A stretch of 64,000 nt of DNA, taken from contig OZ281495.1 in the NCBI GenBank assembly GCA_965637545.1, positions 22,196,001 to 22,260,000 of the forward strand. Direction: 5' to 3'. The notes beneath the pieces were generated by a model that made no database searches, was not told where the DNA came from, and saw only the letters and a program-made list of their open reading frames with translations. A program made the translations under genes and the position numbers. The DNA comes from Phallusia mammillata. Its lineage: Eukaryota. This document shows positions 3,785 to 64,000 of this stretch, one piece after another (position 1 is the first letter of the stretch; the number at the start of each line of letters is the position of its first letter).

Positions 3785-6038
3785 GTGCACGCGACTATAT
3801 AGTCGTATGTTAAAAGTTTGCCATACTTAATCATTATGCCTATTCGTTTTATGTGCATGAAAACTGTTAGAACATTTTCTGGTTTGTGTGTGTTTGTAGT
3901 TAAATTTCGTTTCAAAGTAAGTATGAAATAGGTGTCTAATCTGTACAAAACATTTACAAGTGTAGTTGTAGTGTAGTTTTCACAAATGTACTAATCACAA
4001 TCCCATGAGCTGCTGCTGGAGGTTTTAAAGTAACTGTTTGGACGAACAACAACTGGTTTCTTAACTGTTTCAGGCATACAACGAAAAACGGATAATTGCG
4101 AGCCATAATTTCCGTTAAAGAGTGCAAAGTGTGTTTCATCTTCATTCTGCATGCTGCCGTGACCTTTGCTTCTTGTTTTAGACTCGATGCTTGTACTAGG
4201 AACATGTAGAAACAAACAAAGCACGTTCTAATCATGATGTTATGTTTTTTTATACCCATGTGAAACCAATTTCGTGAAGTTAGTAATTTTAATAAACATA
4301 AAACACACCTTTACTGAATTGATGATGTAAAAAGCACCAAGTTTTGTCAATTCCTAAAAGGGTTAAGGTGTGGCTGCGGGTGGTGAATTTTTGTGTGAAT
4401 AAGGTCGCCAAAAGTTATACGAATAAGGTATTTTCCTGTAGAAAAAAAGGAGGAAATTAGGTTGTGTTACGCGCAATTTTTGGTACCGCCACTATCATAA
4501 TGGTCATGAGACGCCGCCAAAGTGCGATCAAAAAGGTCATTGTTGCTGCAGCAGTTATTACGGTCTGGTCCCATGCAGTCGTTATCTGAGAGACCGTTTT
4601 TTAAAACCGATGACTAAAATATGCATTATAGCTGGATGCATTTACAGGGAACAAGCCTACCACTTACTTTCGAGTATTGCCAACTAGATCAGAGAACCGT
4701 TTTTCCCAAGCATATAACTTTACAATTCGCATCGCAACCAACAACTCGTTCATCGTTTGTATCCGTTTATTTGTTTGAAGCGCGGTTCGAAAACAATGCA
4801 AGCAGAAATTATTGAACAAGCAAAATGCAAATTCCAATTAGAAAATTTGATGATTGTAGGCATAAACCAGAAAGATGGTGTCAAAGTAAATGGTAGATAG
4901 CAGAGAGCTTTTATCATAATATACTTCACAAACAAGCGTTAAGAAAAAGGGATGAGACCAATATATTTACTTTATTTTACAACTATTAAGATTAGGTTAA
5001 GTCAAAACAAGACAACACTATCAGATTAGCTTGGTATCTCCACTTGTAGGTAACTCTTTCAATGCGATTCGCTTTAACCAGAATATTTACATATTTAGTA
5101 ACTGGACAATGTCATAGTACCTGATTTTACCAAAGCACGGTCCCACAAGTATTTGACTCAACAAAGAAAGAAAGATGATGCCAACGCTAACCAGTGCCGT
5201 TATTCCAAGCTCTTGCCACAGTTAATTCGTCACAACTGTCACCAGAATAGGACTTAACCAAATGTAATGAATAAAAGGGCTTAAAATAAGTTATAATACC
5301 AGAAAACATTCTGGTATTTTTATATGTACCGTATGTTTAAGCTTTACGTGTTAAAACAAAAACAAAAAACACGTTAATGGAACTTCTTGGTAACAAATAA
5401 AGCTTATAAAATATATTGAAATCTTAATTTCGAATAGAAGGATTATTCTAGTACTTATTAAAAATCAGGATAGCAACACGCTGGTGTTTTTAATTTAAAG
5501 GGAAATGATTAATACATTTCAATACGAGAAAGAAAACAACAATCCGAAAGCGCCGAAAAATATTTTTTTTAAAGTAGCACCTTTTATGTTTCTTTTCTAC
5601 TGTATCAAATCGTGAAACATGAGCCGTTGTGTTTGAAAGTGACAGCTGGTTGAGACGTAGGGTCTAAAATATTGACAATGTGTTTTTCCAGAATGCTTGG
5701 TTTTGCACGTCGAGCCTTATAAACAGGGTTGCCATACCGTTCTTATTTCTAAGATTTGTCCTTATTTTGAAAGGCTTTGTCTTAGAAAAGTTTATTGTCC
5801 TTATTTCTAAGAATTGTCCTTATTTTTGACCTGAGTCCTTCTTTTGTCTTATTTTCAACAATTACTGTTTAAATTCCTGCTACAAATGAAAGTAAACCTA
5901 GACCTGAGCTGTTGTGCGATGCACAAAGTATTTTCTACGAACAAGAAGTAACTGAAACTGATTGTTTCTGCCCAAATATTGCATATGATATGCCACGGAC
6001 TGAAAACTTTGACAAGTCTGAAGTCGTCCACCGTTTTA

Positions 6039-6085
6039 TTAGACATATATATTTCGCCTAAGTAATAGGCATCGTCAGTATCTAA
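6039..6085 (-). ncRNA. Minimal type I hammerhead ribozyme motif in the Penelope 3' terminal region
   Basis: Minus strand reads TTAGATA-CTGACGA-T-GCCTA(TTACT)TAGGC-GAA-ATATAT-A/TGTCTAA. This gives a 7-bp stem I (one G-U), a CUGANGA and GAAA core, a 5-bp stem II, a palindromic helix III and predicted cleavage after AUA. Confidence 0.8.
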
Positions 6086-6366
6086 AAACAAAACAGCGCT
6101 AAAAAATGGTATGCAAGTTTAACTATAAAGCACAAACAAACATATTAAAAACTGCTGACAGTAAGGTAGAACTGGGACCTGCAGATGGCGCGGCCAAACA
6201 CGCACTAGTAAAGATGGAAAGAAAAGGAAAAAAGGAAAAACGCTCAATCTGTGGCGCGGGGCAAAAGAAGGTAGATAAGAACGGCAGAAGCGTTGTAAAA
6301 ACCAATGGCGGAAACACTGATAAAAATGAACGGACAAAAGGCGCGTAGGAATAAACAAAAAAAATG

Positions 6367-8750
6367 TTATTTAATGTAGGGTAAAAACATTTTTGTAAGT
6401 TTATTTCAGCTCCAATCTTGCTGGCCCACTTACTTTCATAGATGTCCAGTAGATGGATAGGTGGCTGCTCCAAAAACTGCACCCGAAAACACGTGCTGAT
6501 AGGGTCACGGGCATTGGCGCTATGCTCTGTGGCATAGTGCTGACAAAGGGCTGCCTTTTCGTTATAATCACCCGGTTTGAAAGAATTCCACATAGATCTG
6601 TGTCCCGTCCAACGTACTGAAAACTTATTTTTTGTTTGACCGACATACTGCTTTTGGCATATTGTGCAGGTGGCAGCATATATGCCATAGTTGCGGCATG
6701 TGAGTGTTTGCCGTAACTTTGTTACACCCTTTTTGCTTTCTATGTTAGTGGTATAGTCAACCATTCCTTTGTGATTTCCAAAGTGTCCACACAAAGCACA
6801 GTGTCCACAAGGTGCAGACGAGCCCCCAATATGGAACTGTTTTCCCCGACTTGCGCTAGCCGTCTGTAGCGGGTAAGGAGGTTTCCGAGTGTTGGTGGTC
6901 GTTTGTATGTTGTTGTGATATTTTTTACCAAACTTCGGTCTTTTGCGGAAGGTTGTAGTAGTGATGGAAAGCTCGTTGCCCAAACATTCAGAGCCTTTTG
7001 CGAGCTGTTGCCATTCGAGGGTGGAAATCTGTTTGTCCACATACTTGCTTTTTCAATGACGTCATTTGTCATTGACGTAGGGAAGCAGGATAGTTTGGCT
7101 TTGATACGCAGTTTGCCAAGGCTGGCTCTGAAATCATCGTCACGTTCGTTTAAGCGCCGTAGTCGTTTTGACTCTCCATGTATAATGGACTTAAAAACGG
7201 AAGGAGGGTGGTGGGACCATCCGTTTAAAAATCGTCGGCCGGTTGCGGTGTCTTTGACGTAGTCTGTTGTTTTAAATTTAAATTGATTCTGTCGGCTGAT
7301 GACGTGGTTTACATCCAGAAATGGAATATACCCCTCGGTTTGGGCGGTTGTTAGGTAGTTGTGGGTTATTTCCAAACCGTGAGTGGCAAACACGCTCTCG
7401 ATACCCCTAATGGTTGTTCTGAAGATATCGTAGCCAAAACAGAGATAAATCATATCGTCAATGAACCTCATGAACAGTTCTGTCTTTTGTATAAAGCACG
7501 CTGCCTGCACCATGATATAATGAACGCCAATGTTGGCGAGCGAGACAGAATGGTTGTCACCAGTTACGATGCCCTTTTTCTGAGTGTAAAAATTGTCCCC
7601 GTGTTTGAGGATGGCATTTTCCAAACATAAGAATGTTAGTTCGATGAGGTTTTCTATACTATGTTTGCTGAAGTTGCTCTCCGTTGCAAGCGCGTCTTTA
7701 AGCGCCGCACGCAGGTGCGACCGGTCCATGTTGTTGTAAAGTGATTTGACATCTGCTGTTACGATAAACAGAGGCGTATCCGCAAGTTCTTTTTCAATTG
7801 TTGATGTTCTCTTGTCCTTCCAATTTAAAAGTTCACGTAAATAATGAGAACTGTCCCGGCAGTACTCAGGAACAACGGCTTGGTTGTATGAGACACTTAT
7901 TGGCTTTAACAGATATTCTAAGAACGCTGTAATTCTGGACATGGGTGTGTGACTCAGCGATTGCAGCAACCGAACAGGTATTTCACTGACGTCCATCTCT
8001 ACCAGTTGCTTCAAACCCACCTTGTGCGTTTTGAACAAGGGATAGGCGTATGAAGGTGTACAACATCAAAAGTGCTTAGCCGAGGGGCCAGGAACATGTT
8101 GATAGCTATTTCCCTTGCATTTTATACCGAGTGTGTGCCATAGCATTATGTCGCTTAAAACGTTATCTCTGTGAAGGTTTATGATTTTTTCTTCACACTT
8201 CTTTTTGGCCCGAGAAAGGTTTCCTAAGTATACTTCAGAGGAATATTCCAGCTTGACGTGTGTTTCGAGCGATTTTTCCATAACCTGTTGGTAGTCTTCA
8301 TAGTCAATGATTATGATTTTGCCATCCTTGTCCGATTTGCAAATGACAATTGTGTGGCTTGATGTCAGGTGAATCAGCTTGCGTAGACTCCAGTTCATGC
8401 TGGTATTAAGGTTGCATCGTTGGTGATACCGTTGCATTACCTTTGTTCCTAATTGACGCAGCTTGGCGAAGGCAATATCACCGTAAACTTTAATGGCGTC
8501 ACCAAGAAGGTCTTTATGTGGTCTGGAGTATTTTTGCACTTTTAGTTTTTCGGGTATCGCTGGTTCTTGGTGATTTTCTTCGAACAGTGAACTCCACTCG
8601 AGCCTCCGAACATGTTGGTAGGCATTTAACCACTCGCGATTTTCAATTGTTTCCGTCCACCGTGGTGTAGGAGCGAAATTGAGACCGTAACTAAGCAACA
8701 GCTATGATATGCCACCATCGTATAAATGCAAAGATTTGTTCAAGAACGTT
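6367..8750 (-). pseudogene. Penelope-type reverse transcriptase + GIY-YIG endonuclease polyprotein, disrupted
   Basis: RT motifs: LSYGLNFAPTP, YPLFKTHK, TADVKSLY, QKKGIVTGDNHSVSLAN, RFIDD, FLDV. Cys-rich linker CGHCALC. Endonuclease motifs GIYAATCTICQKQYVGQT and RWTGHR. Lesions: in-frame TAG (~8705), in-frame TGA (8066-8068), and 1-nt shortfalls in a G run (~6825) and an A run (~6392). Correcting the last gives the end QKMFLPYIK*. Confidence 0.9.
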
Positions 8751-37980: not shown

Positions 37981-39648
37981 CTAATCATTCAAATTAGGTT
38001 TTAAGACTCTCAAGCAGCCTCCAACCAAATGTAAGCTTCCAGTTATTAACACTTGTAGATGGTCTGATCCACATGGATGGTTTGGCCATGAGTTTTCTAA
38101 ACACAACAATTGTGCTACTTGTTGCAGTTTATCATCCCTGCCTTTTGACATCCAGACAATTGCATCTGCAATACAGGCAAACACATATGACTGTTCTGCA
38201 ACCATCAGATCATTATTGTCTTTGCACAGAGCATTCCATTCATCCTTGTTTTGCAGCACTTGCGCAAGGCGTGATTCCACGGGGCATTGTAGATTGTTTT
38301 GGTCATTGAGATGAGTAGGTAAAAGTGTTGCAATGTTTGGAACAAAAATTGCCTTGGAAAAATTACACTGGTACAAAGTGGATAAAAAACTATATGCATC
38401 ACGCTTTTTGGTGACATTAAAGACAAGTGTTTTTGTGCAAGGTTTAGACAGCTTTGCTGCTTCAGCATCAGATTCCTTTTGAAACCATTCAGTTGCACAT
38501 TTAACACTTCGCATAGTGTGAGCCCCATCCAAATAAAATGTCATTGAGTCAAACTTTATCACTTGTGCCCTTCCATTCCATTCGCAATTTGCCAAACCAT
38601 CCACAGTATTTTTATCTAGTTTTTCACCACTGAACAAACTAACACCTAATTGTTTGAGAAGCCAACAGTTGGCCAATTCTATTGCAAGTGATGCATTAAC
38701 TTTCTGATATTCTCCAGAAAGACCGAGGTTAACATTCTGTTTTGCTGTATAGGTTGTAAAATCTTGTGCAATGTTTAGGCATGCTTGTTTTTTCTTTGCC
38801 ACCTCCTGCAATACTTCTAAACCATTTAATGGTTGCAGAACTGTAAAAGCAGACACACCTGATTTAAAGATCCCTGCTTTATGCCAGGCGATTGATGCAA
38901 TAGTATCTCCCAATAAATTAGTGTGGTCAATTCCTAATGATGAAACACCACATACAGTAGGATTCGTAACAACATTTGTGCAATCATAAGTTCCTCCAAT
39001 TCCTACTTCAAAAATAGCTGCATCCACTTTTTCATGCTTGAAAATGTAAAATCCCAAAACTGTAAGAAAGTAAAAATATGATGGAAATTCTACATCATAG
39101 ATGTCTTTATCAAGCTCCAGAAGCTTGTAAACTTGCCAAAAATAACTTGTAAATAGTTCCCTTGAGATAGGTTTCCCAGCAACTCGAAATCTTTCTCTGA
39201 CTTCTATTAAGTGTGGTGAACTAAAAAAACCCGTCTTTACCCCATGGTGACGTAATATACTTTCAACAAATGCACATGTTGACCCCTTTCCCTTGGTACC
39301 AGCTACGTGGACAATGTTCATGCCTCCAAGGTCATCGTCAGTAATCTTCACACGAGCAAGGAAGTTTCTCATGGCAATTAGTCCGTAGCCTTCATACTTT
39401 TTAGCAAGCGGCATCATTTGTGTGCCTTGCAGTTGATTTAAGGTCTTTACAGCCTCTTCATAGGGGTAGTCAATCATGGCCATTTTGTGTATCTGGCGCG
39501 TGGAAAAAGTCACACGACTATGCAGCGACAGCCTTGCAATACTTTTGCGAAAAATCAACAACATTGTTTGCCGGTACATATACGTAATGGGAGTTCCCCC
39601 AAATATGTCGCCTAGAAAAGGGAATGTGTCGTGTGTCGCGTCCGACAT
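37981..39648 (-). CDS. FPGS: Folylpolyglutamate synthase, single uninterrupted ORF with a probable mitochondrial leader
   Basis: 555-aa ORF. Motifs: P-loop IVHVAGTKGKGSTC, TGFFSSPHL..RERFR, FEVGIGGTYDCTN, IAWHKAGIFK, FYLDGAHT, LITGSLHLVG. In-frame ATGs at 39648, 39579, 39564, 39483 and 39477; the true start is uncertain. Confidence 0.95.
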   Translation of the reverse strand: MSDATHDTFPFLGDIFGGTPITYMYRQTMLLIFRKSIARLSLHSRVTFSTRQIHKMAMIDYPYEEAVKTLNQLQGTQMMPLAKKYEGYGLIAMRNFLARVKITDDDLGGMNIVHVAGTKGKGSTCAFVESILRHHGVKTGFFSSPHLIEVRERFRVAGKPISRELFTSYFWQVYKLLELDKDIYDVEFPSYFYFLTVLGFYIFKHEKVDAAIFEVGIGGTYDCTNVVTNPTVCGVSSLGIDHTNLLGDTIASIAWHKAGIFKSGVSAFTVLQPLNGLEVLQEVAKKKQACLNIAQDFTTYTAKQNVNLGLSGEYQKVNASLAIELANCWLLKQLGVSLFSGEKLDKNTVDGLANCEWNGRAQVIKFDSMTFYLDGAHTMRSVKCATEWFQKESDAEAAKLSKPCTKTLVFNVTKKRDAYSFLSTLYQCNFSKAIFVPNIATLLPTHLNDQNNLQCPVESRLAQVLQNKDEWNALCKDNNDLMVAEQSYVFACIADAIVWMSKGRDDKLQQVAQLLCLENSWPNHPCGSDHLQVLITGSLHLVGGCLRVLKPNLND

Positions 39649-43508: not shown

Positions 43509-46500
43509 TTACATGTCTTTCTGGTTTAACGGAAGAACTTCGTCTTTTGGACAAAAAGATTGACTTGAGGTAGAGGAATCCAGAGACCCTCTGTTCACTG
43601 CCACTTTCTCAAGTTGAAAATCATTTCTTTCTATATTCGCATCATTGTTTAACGGAGGAACACCAAAGCGAAAAAATCGAACAACTGATTTTGGTAGCCG
43701 AAGATTGTCGATAATTGGTACAAATAGCTTGGGATCACTTTTCTTTGGGTCTCTAAAACCTAAAAAATGTTCAAATGATGCCAAAGAAGAAAACTGTTTC
43801 AATACAACTTGTAAGAATCAATAAGGCTATTATCCGATAACTTGAAGGATACTATCAAGCTTGCTATAATATATAGGTACTGACCTGTGCAAGCGGACAC
43901 AATAATTCCAACCATGAAAGTAAGAAAAAACCCGGTTGTCGTGCAATACATGAATGACATAGCTTGTATTGGATCGTAAGTTTTCTCCACACTACAAAAA
44001 TATTTGGTCAAATACTTCTGCTTGTGTGTAAAACGACAATATCGGTAACAAACAAATTTGTATTACCTAATAATACAGTATAACTTTCACCTACCTGTCC
44101 ACATGTCCAGTAGTGAGGTTAATCCAATCGCTAGGTGTCGTTGTGGGGTTGATTGTTGAGTTGTATGACGTCTTTGTGTACTGGTCAACAACATACGTGC
44201 AATTTTCTATAGAAGTTGGTAGCGCGCGTTGCGTTTCTGGTGCCTTTCCGTTTATTAGCCCTCCCAATGCAATCCACAAGGTGGTTACAAATCCAACCAG
44301 TTGGCCAGCGAAAGCACCCTGTGGTTAAACGCAAAAGGGTTGTACCATTTGAGCAAATGTAACGTCTTGCTGATTAAATTCTTCACATTTTATTTTGCAG
44401 CATAAAAGATTTAAATAGAGTAATGATTTTCGAAATTAAGAAGAGATTAATGCATTTTTAATTTATCGAGTTTACCATGATGACACCATATGTCACACCT
44501 GATCGACCATGTTTGCACTTACTTTCGCATTGCACCAGGGAACAAAAACTCCAAGCGTAAAAAGGCCTAATATAGGTCCTCCAAAGGCACCACGAGCCGA
44601 AAAGATTATGGATACGATTGTTTGAGAACTCAAAGAAGACAAGAAAGCAATTGCCGTCACAAAACATCCAATTAAAAGAGCTAAAAGAAATAATAAACTT
44701 ATTAGTTTCTATTATAAGTTGCCTTAATTGTAGGCCACCGGTTATTTTTCCGATGAGAAGTTGTCTAAAATGGGTCATATGAGGTCTGCAGGGCATAACA
44801 AAATCTTCCAACACCATTGAACCGGCAGCGTTAATTCCAGACGATACGGAGCTACATAAACAAAGCGTCATGCGTATGCCTTTTTATCCAAGAACAATTT
44901 GGCATACCTCAACGTTCCACTGTAAGCCGCAGCCACAAAAAATCCTGACATCCCTGGAAGATTTTTGAACGCTTCATGTGCAAGGTATGGCATCATTTGG
45001 TCGGATTTTGCAATTTTTCCAGCTTTGATGGGATCACAACCCTCAAAGAAAGCGTACAATACACAACCACATAAGATGGATAAAAGGGTGATAGTAACTT
45101 TGGGCACAAGAGCAGCGAGAGCTGCACTGCAAACACAACAAAACGGTGGCTGGTAAAAGTGTCTCAGACTTTGACCAAATATATATAGATCACTTTTACG
45201 CACATTCTTGCATCTTTTACGGATCCACATGACAAATATCGTTGGCAAATCGACTGATCAATGCAAGTTTTTGCGGATTGTATAGAACCATATCCAATCA
45301 TAACGGTCCAAAAAGTTGTGCGAATTCTGGGGTTTAGGTCAAATCTAATAATAAAAACGACCCAACAAGTTCACGCTGCATTTTCGTTTTCCATGCGTGC
45401 TTTATTGGAACTTGACTGCTTTATTTGAGCAAAATCTATGAAATCGCGGTTGACTCACACAAAAACATTGTCCCTTCCGCTTCGTTTCAGCGCGTTCCAA
45501 ACATTCTCAACACCATCGAGCATTATTAAAGCCTGGATGAGAACTGAAAGAACTCCTATCAACATAATGACGGCTTGAAATGTATCAGTCCACACGACAG
45601 CTTTCAGTCCCCCCTGCGAGTGTAACATTTCGTTGAATGATTTTTGCAAAAAAATATTTTTTATAAAACTTTACAACTTACAACTGTGGTGTACATTGTG
45701 CAAATGACGCTGGTCATAACAATGCTCCACGCTATACTGATCGGGGTTACAGCGCTAAGCGCCAGAGCGGGAAGATAGACGATCACACCCATGTATATCA
45801 CCTGAAATGGAAGGCGAAAGTTTTAAATATACACATGCTAAAGGTAAGGTTGTTTAAATTGTTGTGGACGATAACAAATCTGAAAAGCATGAGAATATTT
45901 CCACCGACCATATTTGCAATATCCAGGGCCGATGTGATTTTTCGTATGACGGGATGAAACCTCAAGCCCAGATACTAAAATCAATGTTTGTAAGGTTACA
46001 ATTCGATTACAGTGTAGATTGTAAATAAGCTGTACCTCATATATTGTGTTCAAACGAAGTCTATGAATCAAGGGAATGTAGTACAAACAAGCAATAAATG
46101 TTGGTATAACAAGTGTTAAAGAATACCAAAATGTCACAAGCCCAAACAGGTAAGTCTCCGAGGGAAAGCCAATAACTGTGATGGCAGATATATAAGTAAC
46201 TGCAATTGAACATGCCAAAGGAATCTAAGCAAGAAAAAGCAAACGTCAATAACAAATGCTTCTGTGTACTCGCTTGCAGGGCTGCCACTCCTTGGGATTT
46301 TTCTCAAGATCTTGGGATTTCAGTGCTGAGCTTGGGATCTTGGGAAAACTTTTTCAACCTTGGGATTTTTTGAAATTATCTGTTTAATACGTTTAAGATC
46401 CAATTAATACTATTGTTGCAAACAAAAATGATCCTTTTGCAAAAATCATATTTTTATGTAACGATTTGCGTAACAGTGCTTCATCAATTTTGTGTTCGAA

Positions 46501-48225
46501 GCAGTGTAAGTTGATTGAAATTCCCTATCAAAACTAGTGAGTCAGGCCAGTACCACAGGTTTTTCAATGTATCATGTGCCAGTAAAAAAAAAAATTTTCT
46601 TTTGTATTTTTCTAGTATTTCATAGCGTCATTTCAAAAGTACGTGATGGCTGGGACCTGGTGTAATACAAAGATTATGTTGCCTCCGCCAGCTAGGATTT
46701 AAACTGTGTATTTGCCATTTTTTGGTTATCTTGGGATTTTTGGACAAACTTTTTTAGTGAGGGAACCGTGAGATATCTTAAAATTCTCAGTGGCAGCCCT
46801 GCTCGCTTGTATGTTTGAGTGTGTGTTAAAATGACTTACTGGTGACATCTTCCGGTCGCCGTAAAAGTAGTTTTCGACATTCTTTTTACGTCGATCTTTG
46901 ACAGCAAAAAATATTCCGATACTGGCTGATATTGCCAACGTTGCTAAAATCAAAACGCCGTAAGTTAATCTATGCATCAGAGCTACATTGGTGTAATTGG
47001 GACATCACACTCACAACAGACAAAAATTTGCTAAATGTGGGGAGTAACCCTAACCTCAACTCTTACCGTTAGCATTTTTTCCCCGGTGTTCGAACCCAGG
47101 ACACTCCAGGGGCCGAATCCCAATCAGGTTTTTTTAAGTCTATGGGTCAGGTGCGCTAGACAATTCGGCCAAATTCCTTCCCAACCGTTAGCATTTTGAC
47201 AAAAGTATCTTTAAATATTGCTTTTTGCGCCACTTATCGGTATTTGGTATTTCTTCTCTAATGTTGCTCAAGGTGTTAGTGTACTTTCTGACAACTCGTT
47301 TGTTATAATTGACAAAACAATTTCTGTCGCAATTGTTATTCCAGTAAACAATCATTTAAACTGTGACGTAATCAGTTGAGAAGCGGTAGTGAAGGGTAAC
47401 AATATATTAGGTAAAAAGTATTTGGGTGAAACCTGTGAAAAAAGGCTTAAATTTCGAACTGCATAAATATGAGAATATGAAAGTAAAAATTGATTTTAAT
47501 TTTGTAGCTGAACATTTTACATACTTAGCACATAAATTCCGCTCGTCCATAATTTGCACAAGCCAATAAAGCGGTTTGTTAGAAAATATATGAGCGTTTA
47601 TTACATAGCCTTATGTATAATGATTGCGTTGTTTCATGTCTTGGCCAAGGGACGTGTGAACAACATTCTTAAATTCGTTAAAAACCTGTGTCGATACACA
47701 TTTAAACGCTGTAAACACGACCAGTAAGTATGTGTCATGGAAAAGATTACGTCAAATCAAACTTGCTAGTTTTCAGCTTGCATCTAGATATTGACTAGGA
47801 TTTGATAGTGGTAAAATTAAGTTCTAAATATCTCTTCACAGCTGATCATACGTACAAAATATTTAAAACGTTCAAAAATAAAAATGTTTTTGGGTTTATC
47901 TAACCAAATTTCGATTGTAGAAAAACGTAACCTAATGCGTTTTTTTAGTATAACAATCATTTTCAATTCAGTTTTTATGTTAATATGAACTAAAAAGTAT
48001 TCAAGCATTGTTTTTTTGTTTTTTTATCATTTTTTAAACGAAATGCCATGTAATGCTAAAATACGATAGCTTAGGCTGACAAACAGTTTCCCATGGCAGT
48101 ACATACACAGGTCTTGAATTTCCGATAGATTATTGTTGCTTCACTCGTATAGCATATTAATTACTGCACTTACCGGCAAAAATGACGATATCAAGCGTCC
48201 GAAAAGCTGTTGTTGTCGATGGCAT
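43509..48225 (-). CDS. Sodium:solute symporter of the SLC5A5/6/8/12 (NIS/SMVT/SMCT) group, 13 exons, ~632 aa
   Basis: Exons 48225-48174, 46943-46840, 46224-46036, 45974-45909, 45801-45682, 45613-45459, 45344-45204, 45126-44908, 44851-44739, 44680-44523, 44318-44095, 43991-43885, 43759-43509 (1899 nt, in phase). Motifs: GGLKAVVWTDTFQ, GFPSETYLFG, QRYLSC, AAAYSGTLSSVSSGIN. The exact paralog cannot be resolved by eye. Confidence 0.9.
46277..46801. mobile_element. hAT MITE in SLC5 intron 2
   Basis: TIR CAGGGCTGCCACT / AGTGGCAGCCCTG; TSD CTCGCTTG; TTGGGA(T) subterminal repeats. Confidence 0.92.
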
Positions 48226-51507: not shown

Positions 51508-54514
<3,007 letters not shown>

Positions 54515-56156: not shown

Positions 56157-56860
56157 TAACCCATCAGTTGCCTTTTCTAAAACACGCAGACACAATTCTC
56201 TCACTAAAAGAGGTGTGACCATTTTCGACGTTAACTTAAGTTACAAGTATGTGGTTTTTGTAAAGCATCCGTGCGTTTAGGGCGCCGTGTCACATTTCGG
56301 AACTTACGAAGAGCTTCTTGCCGATGGAACAGACTTTGCTGCATTGCTAAAACCTGACGACAATCCAAAATTGTTTGAAGGCCAAAGTACGGTTATTTAT
56401 ATTGTTAACCGTTTACCCCTAGTTGGGTTTACATCTCCGCAACACGTTGCTCAAAATATTTGTAAGCATGCTACAATAATATTGAATAAAACGCCGTTTT
56501 TTGCAATTTCGATAAATTGGAGTTACAAACCCCAGCCTATCTGTTAGGTGAACACAATAATGAAGAAAGCAACAATAACCAGGTATACTATGCTTACGTA
56601 TAAATTAAATAAAAATATTTTTACCGATGGAACTAAGTAAAGGATTTTATGATTTTGCAACTAGACCATGTTTTTTGGTATTAGGCTGATTTTGTTGCGA
56701 ATATCAAGGAAGAGGAACCAAAAACCCAAGGAGGCGTTGGTTGGAAGACTTACGCGGTTTATCTAATGAATAGCAAGTTGACATTCTTTCTTGTGATCTT
56801 CCTTACAGTAATCAACCAAACTTTGTATGTTCTGATTGATTGGTGGATCTCGAAGTGGTA

Positions 56861-57117
56861 GTTTATATCAGACTGAAAACTTTGACAAGTCTGAAGTCGT
56901 CCACCGTTTTATTAGACATATATATTTCGCCTAAGTAATAGGCATCGTCAGTATCTTATTCAAATAGAATGAAAAAAAATATATGTCTAATAAAACGGTG
57001 GACGACTTCAGACTTGTCAAAGTTTTCAGTCTGTTATTATATGCGACTGTTGTCTCCATCTGTCGTACTGAGTCTCAAGTGACTCGTGATTTATAATATA
57101 CTACACAGTTTATGGTA
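56861..57117. mobile_element. 257-bp insertion containing a Penelope terminal fragment as a 55-bp inverted repeat
   Basis: 56871-56956 matches 5998-6083. IR arms at 56869-56923 and 56979-57033. Flanked by duplicated TGGTA (56856-56860, 57113-57117). Absent from the sister copy (~51775). Confidence 0.85.
56914..56956 (-). ncRNA. Second copy of the minimal hammerhead motif (stem I shortened to 5 bp)
   Basis: Core, stem II and helix III identical to 6039-6085. Confidence 0.7.
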
Positions 57118-59127
57118 ATTTATATATACGTACTTTGGGGAACTTTTGACCGACTCGTCTTCGTCTTTTTGCAGGTCGTCTGCTTTTGAAAGTTTGAGTA
57201 TAAACTCTTCCTATTTTGAAGTATCGGAAAACGTCACGAAGTCCGATGTCACCACTGCAGCTAACATCATCGTCGTTGATAACAGACTTTACATATTGAC
57301 TTTAACCTGTACAACGCGTTCTGCGACGGTTTAAGTATTTAAAGCATTGGTTTTAGACCGAAAGATTTTTTATTTCTCCAGACTTGCTTTTTGGTTTTAT
57401 TGCAACTATATATATGCGCTACTTACTTCAAATGCATCATTTAATAGATTCCGGAAAAGTTATGCACGACAAAATGCTTCATGCCATATTGGAATCGCCA
57501 ATTCGGTTCTTCGATGTAAACCCTGTCGGTACGTTACATTAGTTTTTTTGTAGGTCCGGTATAATTTTAGCGTTTTGCAAATCAGGTCGCATACTAAATC
57601 GTTTGTCCAAGGATCTGGGACAAGTTGATGAGATTCTTCCCCGATTTTGTATGTGGTTTTCCTCTGTGGGTATTGATATACTGTTTTCTGTTCTCCTAAC
57701 GGATAAACACTACCCACGAATTTATTTTTCAGGTATTCGGTGATGTCTGTTCAGTCCTAATTGTTGCTGCAGTTGTAAATTACTTTGTTCTCATACCCAT
57801 TTTACCACTTCTGGTTTACTTCTTGTGGCTTCGGCGATACTATGCCAACACGTCATGTGACATCAAGCGGTTGGAAGGAGCAAGTATGTGTCTGACCATT
57901 TTGACGCCAATATGAAACCAAGATAGTCGACTTTTGCTGTTTTTTAGTTTTCTCGCCTATGTATGTTACAACGAACAAACCCCTGCTACAGTAAAAACAA
58001 ACACAAACCCCTGCTACAGTAAAAACCTACAGCCTAATTTGTTTCTTTTATCACAAGCAGGCAGAAGTCCGGTGTTCTCCCACTTAAAATCCACACTTAA
58101 CGGTTTAACGACAGTCCGAGCTTTTAAAATGCAAGAAGAATTTGAAAGTGATTTTCATCAGCTACAAGATTGTCACAGCTGTAGGTAATTCAAAATGCAC
58201 ATTTTATCTCTACATTTAACATCGCCTTCTTTAAAAGGTGCCTGGTACGCGTTCGTGGCTGGAACAAGGTGGTTTGGATTGCGGCTGGATTTAATGGGCA
58301 CTTTATTTGTCGGGGCAGTGACCTTTTTGTCACTAATTACTGTAACAGTAACAGATTCAGACGCCGGACAGGTTGGACTTGCAGTTACTTATGCATTGTT
58401 GCTAGTCGTTTTGATTCAATGGACTGTGCGCACAAGCACGGAAATTGAAAACCAGGCAAGTATATATAAAGTAAGCTAATTGTTTTCTCCTGCCACAGTT
58501 AACATGGATTCCATATTCCTAAATGTCCAAGGCCCCAAAACATCGTGGTTTTGAACGAAATTGTGGTACGTAAAAAAGGAGTTTTAGTTCAGACGAACTG
58601 GGACCAACAAATTACACGTTGTTAAACAAAGTCACTGTGTTACTATCTTTGCTATGTAGCTTAGAACACATAAAAATAATCGCTTACACCTTTAAATATT
58701 GTTAATAGTGGCAGATGACTTCCGTTGAACGAATCCAACAATACCTCAAGCTTCCACGGGAGGCGGCTCACCACGTACCTCAATTTGATAAAAGTCTTCC
58801 CAGTGATTGGCCAACTAGCGGGAAAATAGAGTTTTGTAAATTGTCCTTCTCACACTACATTGGAGGTCCTGCAGTGTTGCATGGTATTTCTTTCGTTATA
58901 TCTCCGCGTGAAAAGGTTAGTGCTTGATTAGGCATCAAACACTGATCCCCTGCAAACCTCGGATAACGCAAAATGAACAAAACTGAGTACTGCCAAAGTT
59001 ATAGTTTTCGTAACAACTTGTTTATAAAGCGTATGTGCTGTCAACGTTCAATGCGCTACAACCAACCCAGCTGATGCCCCTTTTTTCAACTTTTTACGTC
59101 AAAGCCTCGAGAAACAGTTCATCATAA

Positions 59128-59471
<344 letters not shown>

Positions 59472-59875
59472 TAAAAAAGTGTTTTTTTATGGTAACTTTC
59501 TTTAAAAATGTCGAAATCAACTGGATGGCAAACAAGTACATGGAAAATTACAACCATAAATATGAATCCATTATTTAAATCAGTCCTACAGCTTCGATGC
59601 AAATCAGCAATTACGACATAATATCTTAAAATACCATCAATTAGCCAATGATTTAATGAAATGGTGCAAGGGTTGTAATGCCAATTCATATCAACATATA
59701 TACGCGCTCTACCAACTGAGCTACACAGGCTCAGTGGAGAATCCGCCGAAAGTCGAATCACAAGCACCGTTGCCTGCCTCGTATGCTGCACATGTCAGCT
59801 TCGTGGTAGGGGATCGCCAGATTGACCAGTATCAGTTAAGATGAACATAAATTCATAACTGGGATCAGCCCTGAA

Positions 59876-59949
59876 GCCTGTGTAGCTCAGTTGGTAGAGC
59901 GCGAGTCCCGGAAAGACTCCTGTCGTGGGTTCGAATCCCACCGCAGGCT
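59876..59949 (+). tRNA. tRNA-like gene or SINE head with a full cloverleaf, nominal anticodon GGA, non-canonical
   Basis: Acceptor stem GCCTGTG/CGCAGGC, D stem GCTC/GAGC, anticodon stem GAGTC/GACTC with loop CCGGAAA, T stem GTGGG/CCCAC with loop TTCGAAT. A and B boxes intact; T5 at 59953-59957. C33, an extra base before the anticodon stem and a short variable arm argue against a translating tRNA-Ser. Confidence 0.55.
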
Positions 59950-60230
59950 AGATTTTTCTAGCCTACGCCTTGCCATATGGTGGTGAATGCTTGGTGACCG
60001 GCTGATTCGGTATAGCGCCTTCAATGGGCCTGGCGTACTGTGATTTATATATGAGTGTGCCGTGATCGCTGGTCTGCATAGACGCTTCAGGGCTGATCCC
60101 AGTTATGAATTTATGTTCATCTTAACTGATGCTGGTCAATCTGGCGATCCCCTACTACGAAGCTGACATGTGCAGCATACGAGGCAGGCAACGGTGCTTG
60201 TGATTCGACTTTCGGCGGATTCTCCACTGA

Positions 60231-60304
60231 GCCTGTGTAGCTCAGTTGGTAGAGCGCGAGTCCCGGAAAGACTCCTGTCGTGGGTTCGAATCCCACCGCA
60301 GGCT
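60231..60304 (+). tRNA. tRNA-like gene, copy 2 (identical head)
   Basis: As 59876-59949. Confidence 0.55.
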
Positions 60305-60585
60305 AGATTTTTCTAGCCTACGCCTTGCCATATGGTGGTGAATGCTTGGTGACCGGCTGATTCGGTATAGCGCCTTCAATGGGCCTGGCGTACTGTGATT
60401 TATACATGAGTGTGCCGTGATCGCTGGTCTGCATAGACGCTTCAGGGCTGATCCCAGTTATGAATTTATGTTCATCTTAACTGATACTGGTCAATCTGGC
60501 GATCCCCTACTACGAAGCTGACATGTGCAGCATACGAGGCAGGCAACGGTGCTTGTGATTCGATATTCGGCGGATTCTCCACTGA

Positions 60586-60659
60586 GCCTGTGTAGCTCAG
60601 TTGGTAGAGCGCGAGTCCCGGAAAGACTCCTGTCGTGGGTTCGAATCCCACCGCAGGCT
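60586..60659 (+). tRNA. tRNA-like gene, copy 3 (identical head)
   Basis: As 59876-59949. Confidence 0.55.
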
Positions 60660-61617
60660 AGATTTTTCTAGCCTACGCCTTGCCATATGGTGGTGAATGC
60701 TTGGTGACCGGCTGATTCGGTTGATTCGGTATAGCGCCTTCAATGGGCCTGGCGTACTGCAATTTCAGGATAATATATAAAAAATCTGAGGTGGTTGTGT
60801 TGGTCCATCTGTATATAAATGTATTTCAAAACTATCCCTATTATTTGGAAACCACAAATTAATCATAGATATCATATTGTACTATTTATACTTGTATTTC
60901 AGAAAAATACATAATCAACAAAAATACATGCACAAAACGTTGTGTTTGTTTTTGGTAAACTTGTTTAATTAAAAAGTTAATCCTCATACGTTCAACAGTA
61001 TGTTTTAATTCTCCAGGCATTTAACACCAAGCAAGATGCCAATAAACAACACCAAGATGCCAATAAAGATAGCATATTCTAAAATTGTTTTGTCTACAAA
61101 CTGTATGCTGCAATGAAGCATGAGAATATTTACTGCAGCACCACCTTTTAAATTCATGTTTGCAGTCAGAAACACATTTATCAGAAATAAAGTCTGCATA
61201 TACTATGTTGGCGATATACACCAACTGAACAGTTTTAAAACATTTTTATATGTTGTTGGATGTCGTTCACAGAAGATACAATCCAAAGGTTTGCCGACCT
61301 ATTAAATCTAAAGGTTGGTTAAAAATCAGGTGGCCAAAATCAACCGAAATTTGGTGGCAAAATTGGCACACAATCAGTACGTTTCAAAATGATTTCAAAA
61401 TTGTAAACTTTCTGCCGATGAAAATGGTTTAAAATGTATTTGACTTATTGGCGCATGCTTAGTTAGCAAATAGAACTCGTAGCGATGCGGTTACTTGACA
61501 ACATCGAGGATCGAAAAAGAGCAAATCATACAAACGAAAACATGTTCACGACCAAACCTTCATGCATGACTGTGGCTGTATCAGATTCAAATATATGCTA
61601 TTTCTTGTCCGACAAAA

Positions 61618-63942
61618 ATGTCAGTAATAAAGGCAGCTTTTGGGACCCTTGATATTGCTATTTTTGCAGGTAAGTCGAGTTTTAAGTGTAAATGCGGAAA
61701 AGATAAAATAAAAGTCGGCGTGAAGTTACGGTGTGTATTTCGGTAAAAGTTGTTTGTAACTGGCGTCATGAACACATATACTTCACTGTGAAGCAACAGG
61801 TAGCATCTCTAAATCATTCAAATGTTGAGTTGTCAGTTTTGTCATGACGTTTGTAACAATAAAAATGATAATAATTTTTATGAACTGCCGTAATAAACAA
61901 ACTTTTTTAAGCACCAAAAGTCACTAACAAACATGTAAATCGTAGCAAAATAGCAAGCAAAATGATGCGTGAGAACACCACGTATAAAATATGTGGTCTC
62001 GGTTGCGCAGTCAATAGCAAATTCAATCGCTGTACTTCGTTACAGCAACACTCGTTATATCTGCCGGTATTGGGATATTTTTTGCTGTCAAGGATCGAAG
62101 GAAGAAAAATGTCGAAAACTACTTTTACGGCAGCCGGAAAATGTCACCTGTGAGTTTCACTACATCTTCTATAGAGCAGTGGTCGGCAACCGCCGGTCCG
62201 CGGCCCAGTACCGGTCCGCGGCGAGTTGGTTACCGGGCCGTATACTTTTTCAGGTTAAATGCTACAAAACATTTTGCCCATGTATCCCGGGATGATAAAC
62301 TAATTTAAGCGTTTTTATTTCTAAATATTTGTAGTTTTTTGAAGACCGGTCCGCGATAAAATTTCACTTTCTAAAGCGGTCCGCAGTGCAAAAAAGGTTG
62401 CCGACCCTGTTCTAGAGTATACAATATAAATATATAAACACTTAATTCAAAATAATTTCAGATTCCTGTGGGATGTTCCATTGCTGTGTCCTTCATATCT
62501 GCCATCACAGTGATTGGTTTTCCCTCGGAGACCTACCTGTATGGGCTTGTAACATTTTGGTTTTGTTTCACTCTTGTTATTCCAACATTTGTCGCATGTG
62601 TTTACTACATTCCATTGATTCACCGACTGCGTTTAAACACTATATATGAGGTAAAACACGATTGCACTCGTCACACACTTTCTGTAATAATTAAGGATTT
62701 ACAAATTTATGTACGTTTCAGTATCTGGGTTTGAGGTTTCATCCAGTCATAAGAAAGATCACGTCAGCTATGGAGATCGTAAATTTGGTTCGAGCAATTA
62801 TCCACATATTTTTATCGGAGTCATACCAACATATATTTTAAAATTTGGGTGTTTGTGACATTTAAAAAACTTGTAAAACAAAACAGGCCTCAAATTTCTT
62901 TTACACTGATGTCGCGCAACCTCTATTTTAGATGATATACATGGGGGTGGTCGTCTATCTACCCGCTCTAGCGCTTAGCGCTGTAACCCCGATCAGTATA
63001 GAATGGAGCATAGTTATGACCAGCGTTATATGCACAATGTACACAACAGTTGTAAGTTGTAAAGTTTTATGAATTTTTTTTGGGGGGAGGGGAGGCAAAA
63101 ATCATTCATCAAAATTTTACATTCGCAGGGAGGACTAAAAGCTGTTGTGTGGACTGATGCATTTCAAGCTATGATTATGCTAACAGGATCCCTTTCAGTT
63201 CTTATCCAGGCTCTGATAATGGTTGGTGGATTTGGGAATGTTTGGGCAGCGCTTGAAAGAAGCGGACGAAATAACATTTTTGTGTAATTCAATCATAGAA
63301 TTATGTTTAAGTCAAAATTACTGATTTCTAGATTTTTTCAGATTTGACCCCAACCCAAGAATTAGAACAACATTTTGGACCATCATCATTGGATTCAGTT
63401 TGTCGCAAACTGTAACCGCTTGTGTCACCCAGTCGATTTGCCAACGATATCTGTCATGCAGATCGATCAAGGAAGCAAGAATGTGCCCAATAATGATACT
63501 ATTTTTTGATGTTATAAGACACACGCTAAAAACCTTTGTTTTTTTACAGTGCAGCTTTTGCTGCTCTTGTGCCCAAAATTACTATCACCCTTATATCAGT
63601 CTTGAGCGGTGGTGTAGCATACGCTTACTTTGAGGGTTGTGATCCCGTTAAAGCCGGAAAAATTTCAAAACCTGATCAATTAATGCCGTATCTAGCACTT
63701 AAAGTCTTCGAAGAACTTCCAGGATTGTCAGGATTTTTCGTGGCCGCTGCTTATAGCGGAACTTTGAGGTATGTGATATCGTATCTTAGTAAAATAACAA
63801 ACTTACATGACAATTTGGATATATTGCAGCTCCGTATCGTCAGGAATTAACTCAGCTAGTTCGATGGTGTTGGAGGATCTGATTATGCCCTGCAAACCTC
63901 ATTTGTCTCATATCAAACAGCTTGTCTTCGGAAAAATAATAG
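61618..63942 (+). CDS. Second SLC5A5/6/8/12-group symporter (5' nine exons; continues beyond the window)
   Basis: Exons 61618-61669, 62046-62149, 62462-62650, 62722-62787, 62932-63051, 63129-63283, 63342-63482, 63550-63768, 63830-63942. Lengths are identical to the minus-strand paralog (52, 104, 189, 66, 120, 155, 141, 219, 113). Confidence 0.9.
62177..62409. mobile_element. Small hAT MITE in intron 2 of the + strand SLC5
   Basis: TIR CAGTGGTCGGCAACC / GGTTGCCGACCCTG; imperfect TSD (CTATAGAG / TTCTAGAG); CGGTCCGC motifs. A related left end is at ~55408. Confidence 0.75.
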
Positions 63943-64000
63943 GTGGGTTGAAAGCAAAGCAATGGTTTGTAACAAAGACACTTTAAACTATTGTCCCAGC

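What the first reader, a model, noticed from the sequence alone, without database searches (positions are those of the whole stretch)
59703..60759. Inverted-plus-tandem array of a 355-bp unit built around a perfectly folded but non-canonical tRNA-like gene
Seen: three identical 74-nt cloverleaves with fully paired stems, intact A and B boxes and a T5 run 3 nt downstream. The anticodon loop is CCGGAAA (C33, nominal GGA), with an extra base before the stem and no long variable arm. The T5 run sits in the loop of an 8-bp hairpin (AGGCTAGA/TCTAGCCT, 59945-59964) that competes with the acceptor stem. The array opens with an inverted partial unit and truncates ABCC4-D. Established: eukaryotes generally lack tRNA-Ser(GGA), Ser tRNAs have long variable arms, and SINE heads usually lack an immediate terminator. 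Inference: a Pol III tRNA-mimic RNA with a possible termination/read-through switch, amplified as a unit. The inverted-then-tandem layout resembles Penelope-type or rolling-circle insertion products, so it could be a non-autonomous passenger of the Penelope machinery seen in this window.
Basis: partly seen in the sequence, partly recalled or inferred. Interest (0 to 1): 0.75.

Follow-up and report, generated by a model that had tools for sequence, protein, structure and literature searches.

The report
Penelope-style retroposon carrying a tRNA-like gene
This is one insertion of a young, abundant 355-base non-coding jumping element that carries a tRNA-like gene and is laid down as part-inverted, head-to-tail copies, the way Penelope-like retrotransposons insert; it is an unusual variant of a known kind, not a locally amplified new RNA gene.

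Summary
There are three identical 74-nt cloverleaves (Rfam tRNA, 55.3 bits), with A and B boxes, a CCGGAAA anticodon loop, a T5 run 3 nt downstream inside an 8-bp hairpin, a 355-bp unit repeated 2.4 times, and a 175-bp inverted piece in front.

It is not a local amplification. The same unit occurs at hundreds of places in this 240-Mb genome at 95-100% identity. Exact 27-mers of the unit occur 169-439 times each.

Insertions share two fixed 3' ends, at unit positions about 170 and about 250. Their 5' starts vary, they hold one to four head-to-tail units, and many have 8-14-bp target-site duplications. Many also carry an inverted 5'-truncated copy at the 5' side: 16 divergent pairs against 0 convergent.

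This is the published insertion signature of Penelope-like elements (PLEs). Genuine PLE fragments in this genome show the same signature, and intact PLE ORFs are present.

No hammerhead or other ribozyme was found, and no sampled PLE shares sequence with the unit. RNA data could not be obtained, so Pol III activity and the proposed termination/read-through switch remain untested.

This scan met the family before on other DNA of this genome. I rate it a new variant of a known kind, of moderate interest.

The parts
59703..59877 (-). Inverted, 5'-truncated piece of the unit (unit positions 210-355 followed by 1-29, read on the minus strand). It joins the direct array through a 3-nt microhomology (AGC).
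59875..60229 (+). Full unit 1 (355 bp). It equals the family consensus except at position 257.
60230..60584 (+). Full unit 2 (98.9% identical to unit 1).
60585..60759 (+). Terminal partial unit, ending at the family's canonical 3' end (unit position about 170, ...GGCGTACTG). It contains a 9-bp internal tandem duplication near 60713-60730.
59876..59949 (+). tRNA-like gene, copy 1 (A and B boxes; anticodon loop CCGGAAA).
60231..60304 (+). tRNA-like gene, copy 2.
60586..60659 (+). tRNA-like gene, copy 3.
59945..59964 (+). 8-bp hairpin enclosing the T5 run (59953-59957). Its 5' arm overlaps the 3' strand of the acceptor stem. It is repeated at +355 and +710.
54359..54514 (-). Second copy of the inverted piece (unit 229-355 plus 1-29), carried at the right end of a 3-kb duplicate of 56523-59858. 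It shows that the inverted piece predates that duplication.
5995..8698 (-). Penelope-like element in the window (RT and GIY-YIG reading frames with a truncated 3' end). It is one of many PLE families in the genome and a candidate source of the machinery.
56861..57112 (.). Inverted-plus-direct pair of the 3' end of that PLE family. It has the same layout as the 355 array and serves as an internal control. The empty site is preserved at 51771, and the target-site duplication is about 11 bp.

Best explanation
The array is one insertion of a young, dispersed, non-coding retroposon family whose repeat unit is 355 bp.

The unit carries a tRNA-derived module in its middle: a cloverleaf, A and B boxes, and its own T5 terminator. 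The rest of the unit matches nothing known.

New copies are made from RNA by target-primed reverse transcription of the Penelope type, most likely in trans by the RT/GIY-YIG protein of one of the genome's many intact Penelope-like elements. Priming occurs at one of two fixed 3' ends (unit positions about 170 or about 250). Copying stops at a variable point, which gives 5' truncation. It can run over more than one unit, which gives head-to-tail partial multimers. Second-strand events often add an inverted 5'-truncated copy at the 5' side.

Shown here: the dispersal, the youth of the family, the two 3' ends, the truncation gradient, the target-site duplications, the inverted-copy rule, and the same layout in genuine PLE fragments of this genome.

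Inferred: that a PLE supplies the enzyme, and that the partial upstream unit acts like a pseudo-LTR whose tRNA-type promoter drives read-through transcripts.

The tRNA-like module is not a decoding tRNA. It has C33, a nominal Ser anticodon without the long variable arm, and an extra base at position 26/27.
For: Dispersal: the unit matches places on all large contigs at 95-100% identity, with 5248 first-look candidates. Exact 27-mers of the unit occur 169-439 times, against 0 for the reversed controls.

Two 3' ends and a 5'-truncation gradient: counts rise 169 -> 244 -> 313 -> 387 from unit 259-285 to 144-170. They fall to 253 just after position 170, rise to 439 at 211-237, and fall to 169 after position 250. 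Alignments end at about 167-176 or 250-256.

Target-site duplications: 10 of 20 distinct loci have clear duplications of 8-14 bp.

Inverted copies: 9 of 20 long loci carry an inverted piece at the 5' side. In the unbiased probe lists there are 16 distinct close (-,+) pairs and no (+,-) pair.

Match to the literature: 5' truncation, partial tandems, an inverted 5'-truncated copy at the 5' end, and short terminal extensions are the published PLE insertion signature. Non-autonomous PLEs that form multicopy head-to-tail insertions are also described (PMC8557442).

Internal control: 3' fragments of a genuine PLE family in this genome show the same divergent pairs in 8 of about 40 loci, and an 11-bp duplication at a site whose empty allele is preserved.

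Machinery: at least 516 RT candidates in several families. These include intact 947-aa and 930-aa ORFs with RVT_1 plus a C-terminal GIY-YIG domain, and tandem PLE arrays.
Against: No sequence is shared between the unit and the window's PLE or about 8 other PLE families sampled with 1.5-kb flanks. The best gapped likeness to the PLE tail is at chance level (p about 0.04).

No RNA evidence could be obtained.

The only Pol III terminator lies directly after the tRNA-like gene. A Pol III origin of the mobile RNA therefore needs read-through, and the two 3' ends are not T runs.

The sample of long loci was chosen by best match, and only part of the genome's PLE diversity was examined.

This particular insertion has no target-site duplication.
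Confidence: 0.65

Rival explanations
1. An ordinary tRNA-derived SINE mobilised by a non-Penelope LINE. The inverted pieces would come from twin priming, and the multimers from template switching or from transcription of pre-existing dimers.
For: Target-site duplications of 8-14 bp, 5' truncation and fixed 3' ends fit any target-primed reverse transcription. 5' inversions are known from L1 twin priming (my own knowledge).
Against: There is no A-rich or microsatellite tail, and the ends are ...GTGAT(TT) or ...CATCTTA(A). The tRNA module is not at the 5' end of a fixed-length element. Head-to-tail arrays of up to about 4 units are common. The same layout is seen in genuine PLE fragments of this genome. 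No LINE partner was sought or found.
Confidence: 0.15
2. A retrozyme-like element that propagates through a circular RNA copied by rolling-circle reverse transcription. The tRNA-like structure would replace the hammerhead as the processing signal, cut by host RNase P and RNase Z.
For: Unit size (355 bp), tandem copies, co-occurrence with PLEs and variable 5' ends with lengths over one unit fit the model for metazoan non-LTR retrozymes (PMC7229834; bioRxiv 10.64898/2026.07.22.740005).
Against: No hammerhead or other ribozyme at Rfam E<=1 on either strand, and no CUGANGA core. Insertion ends lie at about 170 and 250, not at the tRNA borders (positions 1/2 and 75/76) where RNase P and RNase Z would cut. 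GC content is 52%, against under 50% for retrozymes. The unit folds only modestly better than shuffles (z -2.3) and is not rod-like. RNase P and RNase Z ends are not substrates of the RtcB-type ligase (my own knowledge).
Confidence: 0.1
3. One reading: a functional Pol III tRNA-mimic gene with a termination/read-through switch, whose copies are kept because the small RNA serves the host.
For: A perfect cloverleaf, consensus A and B boxes, a T5 run at the normal distance, and a hairpin that displaces the acceptor stem only in read-through RNA.
Against: Hundreds of near-identical copies with truncations, inversions and target-site duplications show a selfish repeat. The identity between copies is the same inside and outside the cloverleaf (0.98-1.00 against 0.96-1.00 per 15-nt bin), so nothing singles out the RNA gene. 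C33 and the absence of a long arm exclude a Ser tRNA.
Confidence: 0.07
4. A satellite-like repeat spread at the DNA level by unequal crossing-over, rolling-circle DNA replication or a Helitron.
For: Tandem units with a precise 355-bp period.
Against: Arrays are short (4 units or fewer), dispersed over all contigs and flanked by 8-14-bp target-site duplications. They have fixed 3' ends and graded 5' ends.
Confidence: 0.03

Closest known systems
Metazoan non-LTR retrozymes (Cervera and de la Pena 2020, PMC7229834; Li et al. 2026 preprint 10.64898/2026.07.22.740005)
   Same: Non-coding repeats of 150-450 bp in short dispersed tandems. Target-site duplications are longer than 4 bp. They are found in genomes rich in PLEs and are regarded as non-autonomous PLE derivatives.
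   Different: The defining type I hammerhead ribozyme is absent here. GC content is 52%. No similarity to a PLE pseudo-LTR was found. No circular RNA has been shown. A tRNA-like gene is present instead.
Sm-alpha / Sj-alpha SINE-like elements of schistosomes (Ferbeyre 1998 and Laha 2000, as cited in PMC2770079 and PMC8490949)
   Same: A unit of about 335 bp, both tandem and dispersed, whose tRNA-related part is called as thousands of tRNA pseudogenes by tRNA finders (2,342 'tRNA-Gln' calls in S. mansoni).
   Different: Sm-alpha carries an active hammerhead; this element has none. The host phylum differs.
Non-autonomous Chlamys PLEs such as MRC1 of Chlamydomonas (Craig et al. 2021, PMC8557442)
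   Same: Short non-coding elements that form pseudo-LTRs and multicopy head-to-tail insertions by PLE machinery, without canonical hammerheads.
   Different: Those elements share their 3' ends with autonomous families; no such sharing was found here. They carry no tRNA-like gene.
Classical tRNA-derived SINEs
   Same: A tRNA-derived A/B-box module, high copy number, target-site duplications, and dependence on a partner's reverse transcriptase.
   Different: The tRNA module sits in the middle of a circularly permuted unit and keeps its own terminator. There is no A-rich or LINE-like tail. The element inserts as multimers with inverted 5' copies.

Membership tests
Functional (decoding) tRNA gene | Cloverleaf that scores above the tRNA model threshold | tested here: met
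   RF00005 55.3 bits against 29; the minimum-energy fold is a cloverleaf.
Functional (decoding) tRNA gene | Canonical anticodon loop (U33), and for Ser a long variable arm | tested here: not met
   The loop is CCGGAAA with C33. The variable region is short, and there is an extra base before the anticodon stem.
Functional (decoding) tRNA gene | Expression, CCA addition and aminoacylation | not testable with these tools
tRNA-derived SINE (LINE-mobilised) | Pol III A and B boxes in a 5' head that starts the element | tested here: inconclusive
   The boxes are consensus-like. But the module lies 95-170 nt upstream of the 3' ends in a permuted unit, and no pile-up of 5' ends at its start was seen.
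tRNA-derived SINE (LINE-mobilised) | A-rich, microsatellite or LINE-derived 3' tail | tested here: not met
   Ends are ...GTGAT(TT) or ...CATCTTA(A).
tRNA-derived SINE (LINE-mobilised) | Dispersed copies with target-site duplications | tested here: met
Metazoan non-LTR retrozyme | Type I hammerhead ribozyme in every unit | tested here: not met
   No Rfam ribozyme hit at E<=1 on either strand, and no CUGANGA core.
Metazoan non-LTR retrozyme | Short tandem repeats of 150-450 bp, dispersed, in a PLE-bearing genome | tested here: met
Metazoan non-LTR retrozyme | Expression as circular RNA | not testable with these tools
   No reads were available.
Non-autonomous Penelope-like element (PLE-type insertion) | Frequent 5' truncation toward a fixed 3' end | tested here: met
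   27-mer gradient 169/244/313/387 and 253/439; alignment ends.
Non-autonomous Penelope-like element (PLE-type insertion) | Partial head-to-tail tandems (pseudo-LTR) | tested here: met
   All 20 long loci; arrays of up to about 4 units.
Non-autonomous Penelope-like element (PLE-type insertion) | Inverted 5'-truncated copy adjacent to the 5' end | tested here: met
   9 of 20 loci; 16 (-,+) pairs against 0 (+,-); the same in genuine PLE fragments.
Non-autonomous Penelope-like element (PLE-type insertion) | Short (30-40 bp) terminal extension at one end | tested here: inconclusive
   Pieces of 38-49 nt that end at the canonical 3' end sit at the 5' side in L004 and L028. There are too few cases to judge.
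Non-autonomous Penelope-like element (PLE-type insertion) | 3' end similar to an autonomous PLE of the same genome | tested here: not met
   No BLAST hit to about 9 families. Gapped alignments are at chance level. Not all families were sampled.
Non-autonomous Penelope-like element (PLE-type insertion) | Intact RT plus GIY-YIG PLEs present in the genome | tested here: met

The most novel reading that the evidence does not exclude
The element is a true Pol III-driven parasite of Penelope-like elements, a 'PLE-SINE'. The tRNA-type promoter of the upstream partial unit plays the role of a pseudo-LTR promoter. Most transcripts stop at the T5 run and give an abundant tRNA-mimic RNA of about 80 nt. 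A read-through fraction, in which the hairpin unfolds the acceptor stem and hides the RNA from tRNA processing, becomes the template that PLE reverse transcriptase copies from the position-170 or position-250 ends. This would be a ribozyme-free route to what hammerhead retrozymes do.
Probability: 0.3. Interest if true: 0.65.

Novelty: new variant of a known kind. Interest (0 to 1): 0.42.

Why it matters
Penelope-like elements are the least understood class of retrotransposons. Their only recognised non-autonomous passengers in animals are the hammerhead-bearing retrozymes.

A young, abundant passenger that has the full PLE insertion signature, carries a tRNA-type Pol III module and has no ribozyme would show two things. 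First, the ribozyme is not needed for trans-mobilisation. Second, it would offer a short, active template, with two defined 3' ends, for studying how PLE reverse transcriptase chooses and copies RNA.

For annotation, the family produces hundreds of false 'tRNA-Ser(GGA)' calls. It also sits at rearrangement points of genes, as in the decaying ABC-transporter paralog here.

Tried and rejected
Expression, RNA ends and RNA circles are therefore untested.

2. A larger unbiased set of loci. I used exact 27-mer counts and their coordinate lists instead.

3. Relatives in other organisms, for covariation. An exact 22-mer of the anticodon arm found nothing in the metagenome contigs. Within the family, copies are 97-100% alike, so no covariation test is possible.

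4. A shared 3' end with a PLE. BLAST found nothing. A long-gap alignment to the window PLE's tail (CGTACTG ... TGATTTATA) is at chance level, with 12 of 300 shuffles as good. Forty further tests gave two at p about 0.02, as chance predicts. That script read only the plus strand of each locus, so it was uninformative for loci whose PLE lies on the minus strand.

5. Hammerhead or other ribozymes in the unit and in the PLE. None at Rfam E<=1 in the unit or E<=10 in the PLE loci, and no CUGANGA core.

6. RNA ends defined by RNase P and RNase Z. Rejected, because insertion ends do not lie at the tRNA borders.

7. A pile-up of 5' ends at the tRNA start, as a Pol III start site would give. Three apparent cases shrank to two after inspection. 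The junction probe (116 copies) is confounded by a G/A polymorphism at unit position 1.

8. The hairpin as a fossil of an old inverted junction. Rejected, because the inverted homology does not extend beyond 10 nt.

9. tRNA-like genes inside PLEs. None in 33 PLE loci.
Full report
THE OBSERVATION

- tRNA-like genes. ARAGORN calls three tRNA-Ser(gga). Rfam's tRNA model scores each at 55.3 bits against a gathering score of 29. Its alignment shows one inserted base before the anticodon stem, the loop CCGGAAA and a short variable region. The 74-nt RNA folds by itself into a complete cloverleaf.
- Promoter and terminator. The A box (TAGCTCAGTTGG) and B box (GGTTCGAATCC) are consensus-like. The only T run of four or more in the whole unit is the T5 that starts 3 nt after the tRNA-like gene.
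- Hairpin. The 8-bp hairpin lies exactly at 59945-59964 and is far more stable than shuffles (-14.2 kcal/mol, z -5.6). In a 95-nt read-through RNA it forms at the expense of the acceptor stem.
- Array. TRF gives a 355-bp period, 2.4 copies and 99% matches. A 175-nt piece at 59703-59877 is the reverse complement of unit positions 210-355 plus 1-29.

In this report, unit position 1 is window 59875. The tRNA-like gene covers positions 2-75.

WHAT IT IS

The array is not a local amplification.

- Dispersal. A search of the window's own 240-Mb assembly finds the unit on all large contigs at 95-100% identity, with 5248 first-look candidates. The window copy equals the family consensus at all but one position.
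- Copy profile. Exact 27-mers taken along the unit occur 169 times (259-285), 244 (316-342), 313 (26-52, the anticodon arm), 387 (144-170), 253 (181-207) and 439 (211-237). Reversed controls occur 0 times.
- Reading of the profile. The steady rise toward position 170, the drop after it, the peak before position 250 and the drop after it are what 5'-truncated copies ending at two fixed 3' ends would give.
- Ends. Alignments do end at about 167-176 (...GGCGTACTGTGAT(TT)) or about 250-256 (...GTTCATCTTA(A)). The window's array ends at the first of these.
- The 20 distinct long loci I could read. The 5' start is variable. One to about four head-to-tail units follow. Ten loci have clear target-site duplications of 8-14 bp. 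Nine carry an inverted 5'-truncated piece at the 5' side.
- Orientation rule. In the coordinate lists of two probes, which are unbiased samples, there are 16 distinct close pairs in the divergent (-,+) order and none in the convergent order.

HOW IT MOST LIKELY WORKS

[quoted passage not shown] Non-autonomous PLEs that make multicopy head-to-tail insertions are also known (PMC8557442).

The genome supplies its own controls.

- PLE in the window. The window holds a PLE at about 5995-8698 on the minus strand, with RT and GIY-YIG frames.
- Same layout. The feature at 56861-57112 is an inverted-plus-direct pair of that family's 3' end.
- Empty site. A recent duplicate preserves the empty site at 51771 and shows a duplication of about 11 bp.
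- Genome-wide control. 3' fragments of this PLE family form the same divergent pairs in 8 of about 40 loci.
- Machinery. PLEs are abundant and diverse, with 516 RT candidates in families that are 38-98% identical to the window's copy. [quoted passage not shown]

I therefore read the 355-bp family as a non-autonomous retroposon copied in trans by PLE machinery.

The enzyme assignment is an inference. No sequence is shared between the unit and about nine PLE families that were sampled with their flanks. The best gapped likeness to the PLE tail is at chance level.

THE tRNA-LIKE MODULE

It is tRNA-derived but is not a decoding tRNA. It has C33, a nominal Ser anticodon without the long arm, and an extra base at position 26/27. 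From memory, its D and T arms resemble Lys- or Ala-type tRNAs; this was not tested.

Its role is open. As in classical SINEs, it could be the Pol III promoter. In a PLE-type partial tandem, the upstream partial unit would then act like a pseudo-LTR promoter.

The T5 run directly after it should stop most Pol III transcripts. Yet insertions almost never end there: there was one inverted piece ending at position 86. The two real 3' ends have no T run. The terminated small RNA is therefore not the mobile RNA. Any Pol III route needs read-through.

Conservation cannot help. Identity per 15-nt bin is equally high inside and outside the cloverleaf.

ALTERNATIVES

- LINE-driven SINE with twin priming. 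This explains the duplications, truncation and inversions. It does not explain the missing tail, the multimers, or the match with genuine PLE fragments.
- Retrozyme-like circular RNA with rolling-circle reverse transcription. This fits the size and tandem form (PMC7229834; preprint 10.64898/2026.07.22.740005). Against it:
  - There is no hammerhead or other ribozyme.
  - Insertion ends do not sit where RNase P and RNase Z would cut.
  - GC content is 52%.
  - The unit folds only modestly better than shuffles (z -2.3).
- Host tRNA-mimic gene, or DNA-level satellite. Both are disfavoured by the dispersal pattern.

CONTEXT OF THIS COPY

The array lies about 240 bp after the last recognisable exon of an ABC-transporter paralog. 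That exon spans 59140-59465, and its Walker A region matches ABC_tran. Two other paralogs have their signature/Walker B exon at about that distance, and no such exon follows in the window.

The paralog is already broken.

- Duplicate. A 99.7% identical 3-kb duplicate of 56523-59858 sits at 51508-54514. It replaces about 1.5 kb of exons and carries an in-frame stop.
- PLE fragment. One sits at a splice donor of the paralog.
- No duplication at this insertion. The array has no target-site duplication.
- Downstream DNA. It is unrelated to the paralogs up to 62057, and then matches 44735-46932 in inverted orientation.

The array therefore marks a rearrangement point. Whether its insertion removed the exons cannot be decided. 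The duplicate ends inside the inverted piece (54359-54514), so that piece predates the duplication.

COMPARISON WITH KNOWN SYSTEMS

- Metazoan non-LTR retrozymes. They have the same size, tandem form and PLE association, but the defining hammerhead was tested and not met.
- Sm-alpha/Sj-alpha elements of schistosomes. These are 335-bp units whose tRNA-related part gives thousands of false tRNA calls, but they carry a hammerhead (PMC2770079; PMC8490949).
- Non-autonomous Chlamys PLEs such as MRC1.

I found no description of a tRNA-bearing, ribozyme-free, PLE-style retroposon in the papers searched. That is not proof of absence.

EARLIER NOTES OF THIS SCAN

The scan found the same family before on other DNA of this genome (s1-355927, s1-395759) and reached the same reading. 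I re-derived it independently here.

I added the genome-wide 27-mer profile, the orientation rule, the PLE internal control with an empty site, and the negative partner tests.

Those notes call the host a sea squirt. I did not verify the species; a protein-atlas look at a neighbouring gene only says eukaryote or chordate.

LIMITS

- No RNA data were available.
- No further genome letters could be fetched after 72 loci.
- The long loci were chosen by best match.
- Only part of the PLE diversity was sampled, and no LINEs were.
- The consensus used to place probes was of the non-coding 355-bp repeat only.

VERDICT

This is a new variant of a known kind, of moderate interest.

Noticed in passing
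window 51508-54514 and 56523-59858: A 3-kb, 99.7% identical intrachromosomal duplicate that keeps its introns. Its right end lies inside the inverted 355 piece (unit position 229) and is followed by 6-7 A. It replaces about 1.5 kb of exons of the ABC-transporter paralog. Only a weak CTTTT repeat flanks it. PLEs are reported to retrotranspose intron-containing host sequence (PMC8557442), but a DNA-level duplication is equally possible.
   Followed up: partly
window 56861-57112: The 'mini-palindrome' at a splice donor is an inverted-plus-direct pair of the 3' end of the window's PLE family. The empty site is preserved at 51771, and the target-site duplication is about 11 bp. Rfam finds no ribozyme in it at E<=10, only spurious miRNA-hairpin matches.
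   Followed up: yes
L032-L035 (contig 3, about 3.21 Mb) and L067-L072 (contig 8, about 5.58-5.60 Mb): Head-to-tail arrays of whole PLEs with periods of 3286 bp and 3300 bp, some with open frames of 930-947 aa (RVT_1 plus a C-terminal GIY-YIG domain). The PLEs of this genome look young.
   Followed up: partly
unit position 1 (window 59875, 60230, 60585): The base just 5' of the cloverleaf is polymorphic in the family (G in 25 and A in 17 junctions read), which suggests two subfamilies. The window copy has A.
   Followed up: partly
window 57060-57100 compared with 60030-60060: The PLE tail and the unit share CGTACTG and TGATTTATA, separated in the PLE by a 16-nt hairpin. That hairpin's stem (GAGTC/GACTC) is the same as the anticodon stem of the tRNA-like gene. 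Statistically this is at chance level (p about 0.04).
   Followed up: partly
L020, about 1960-2035: One family copy has an 11-nt piece of the unit (GAATGCTTGGT) expanded into a short microsatellite-like run inside the array.
   Followed up: no
window 37981-39648 (minus strand): A single-exon 555-aa ORF for a folylpolyglutamate synthase-like protein (a weak Mur_ligase_M match; atlas clusters named FPGS) lies between the ABC-transporter paralogs.
   Followed up: partly
window 62057-63946 compared with 44735-46932: Inverted homology of 76-86% identity just downstream of the array, so the array lies next to an inverted segmental duplication.
   Followed up: no
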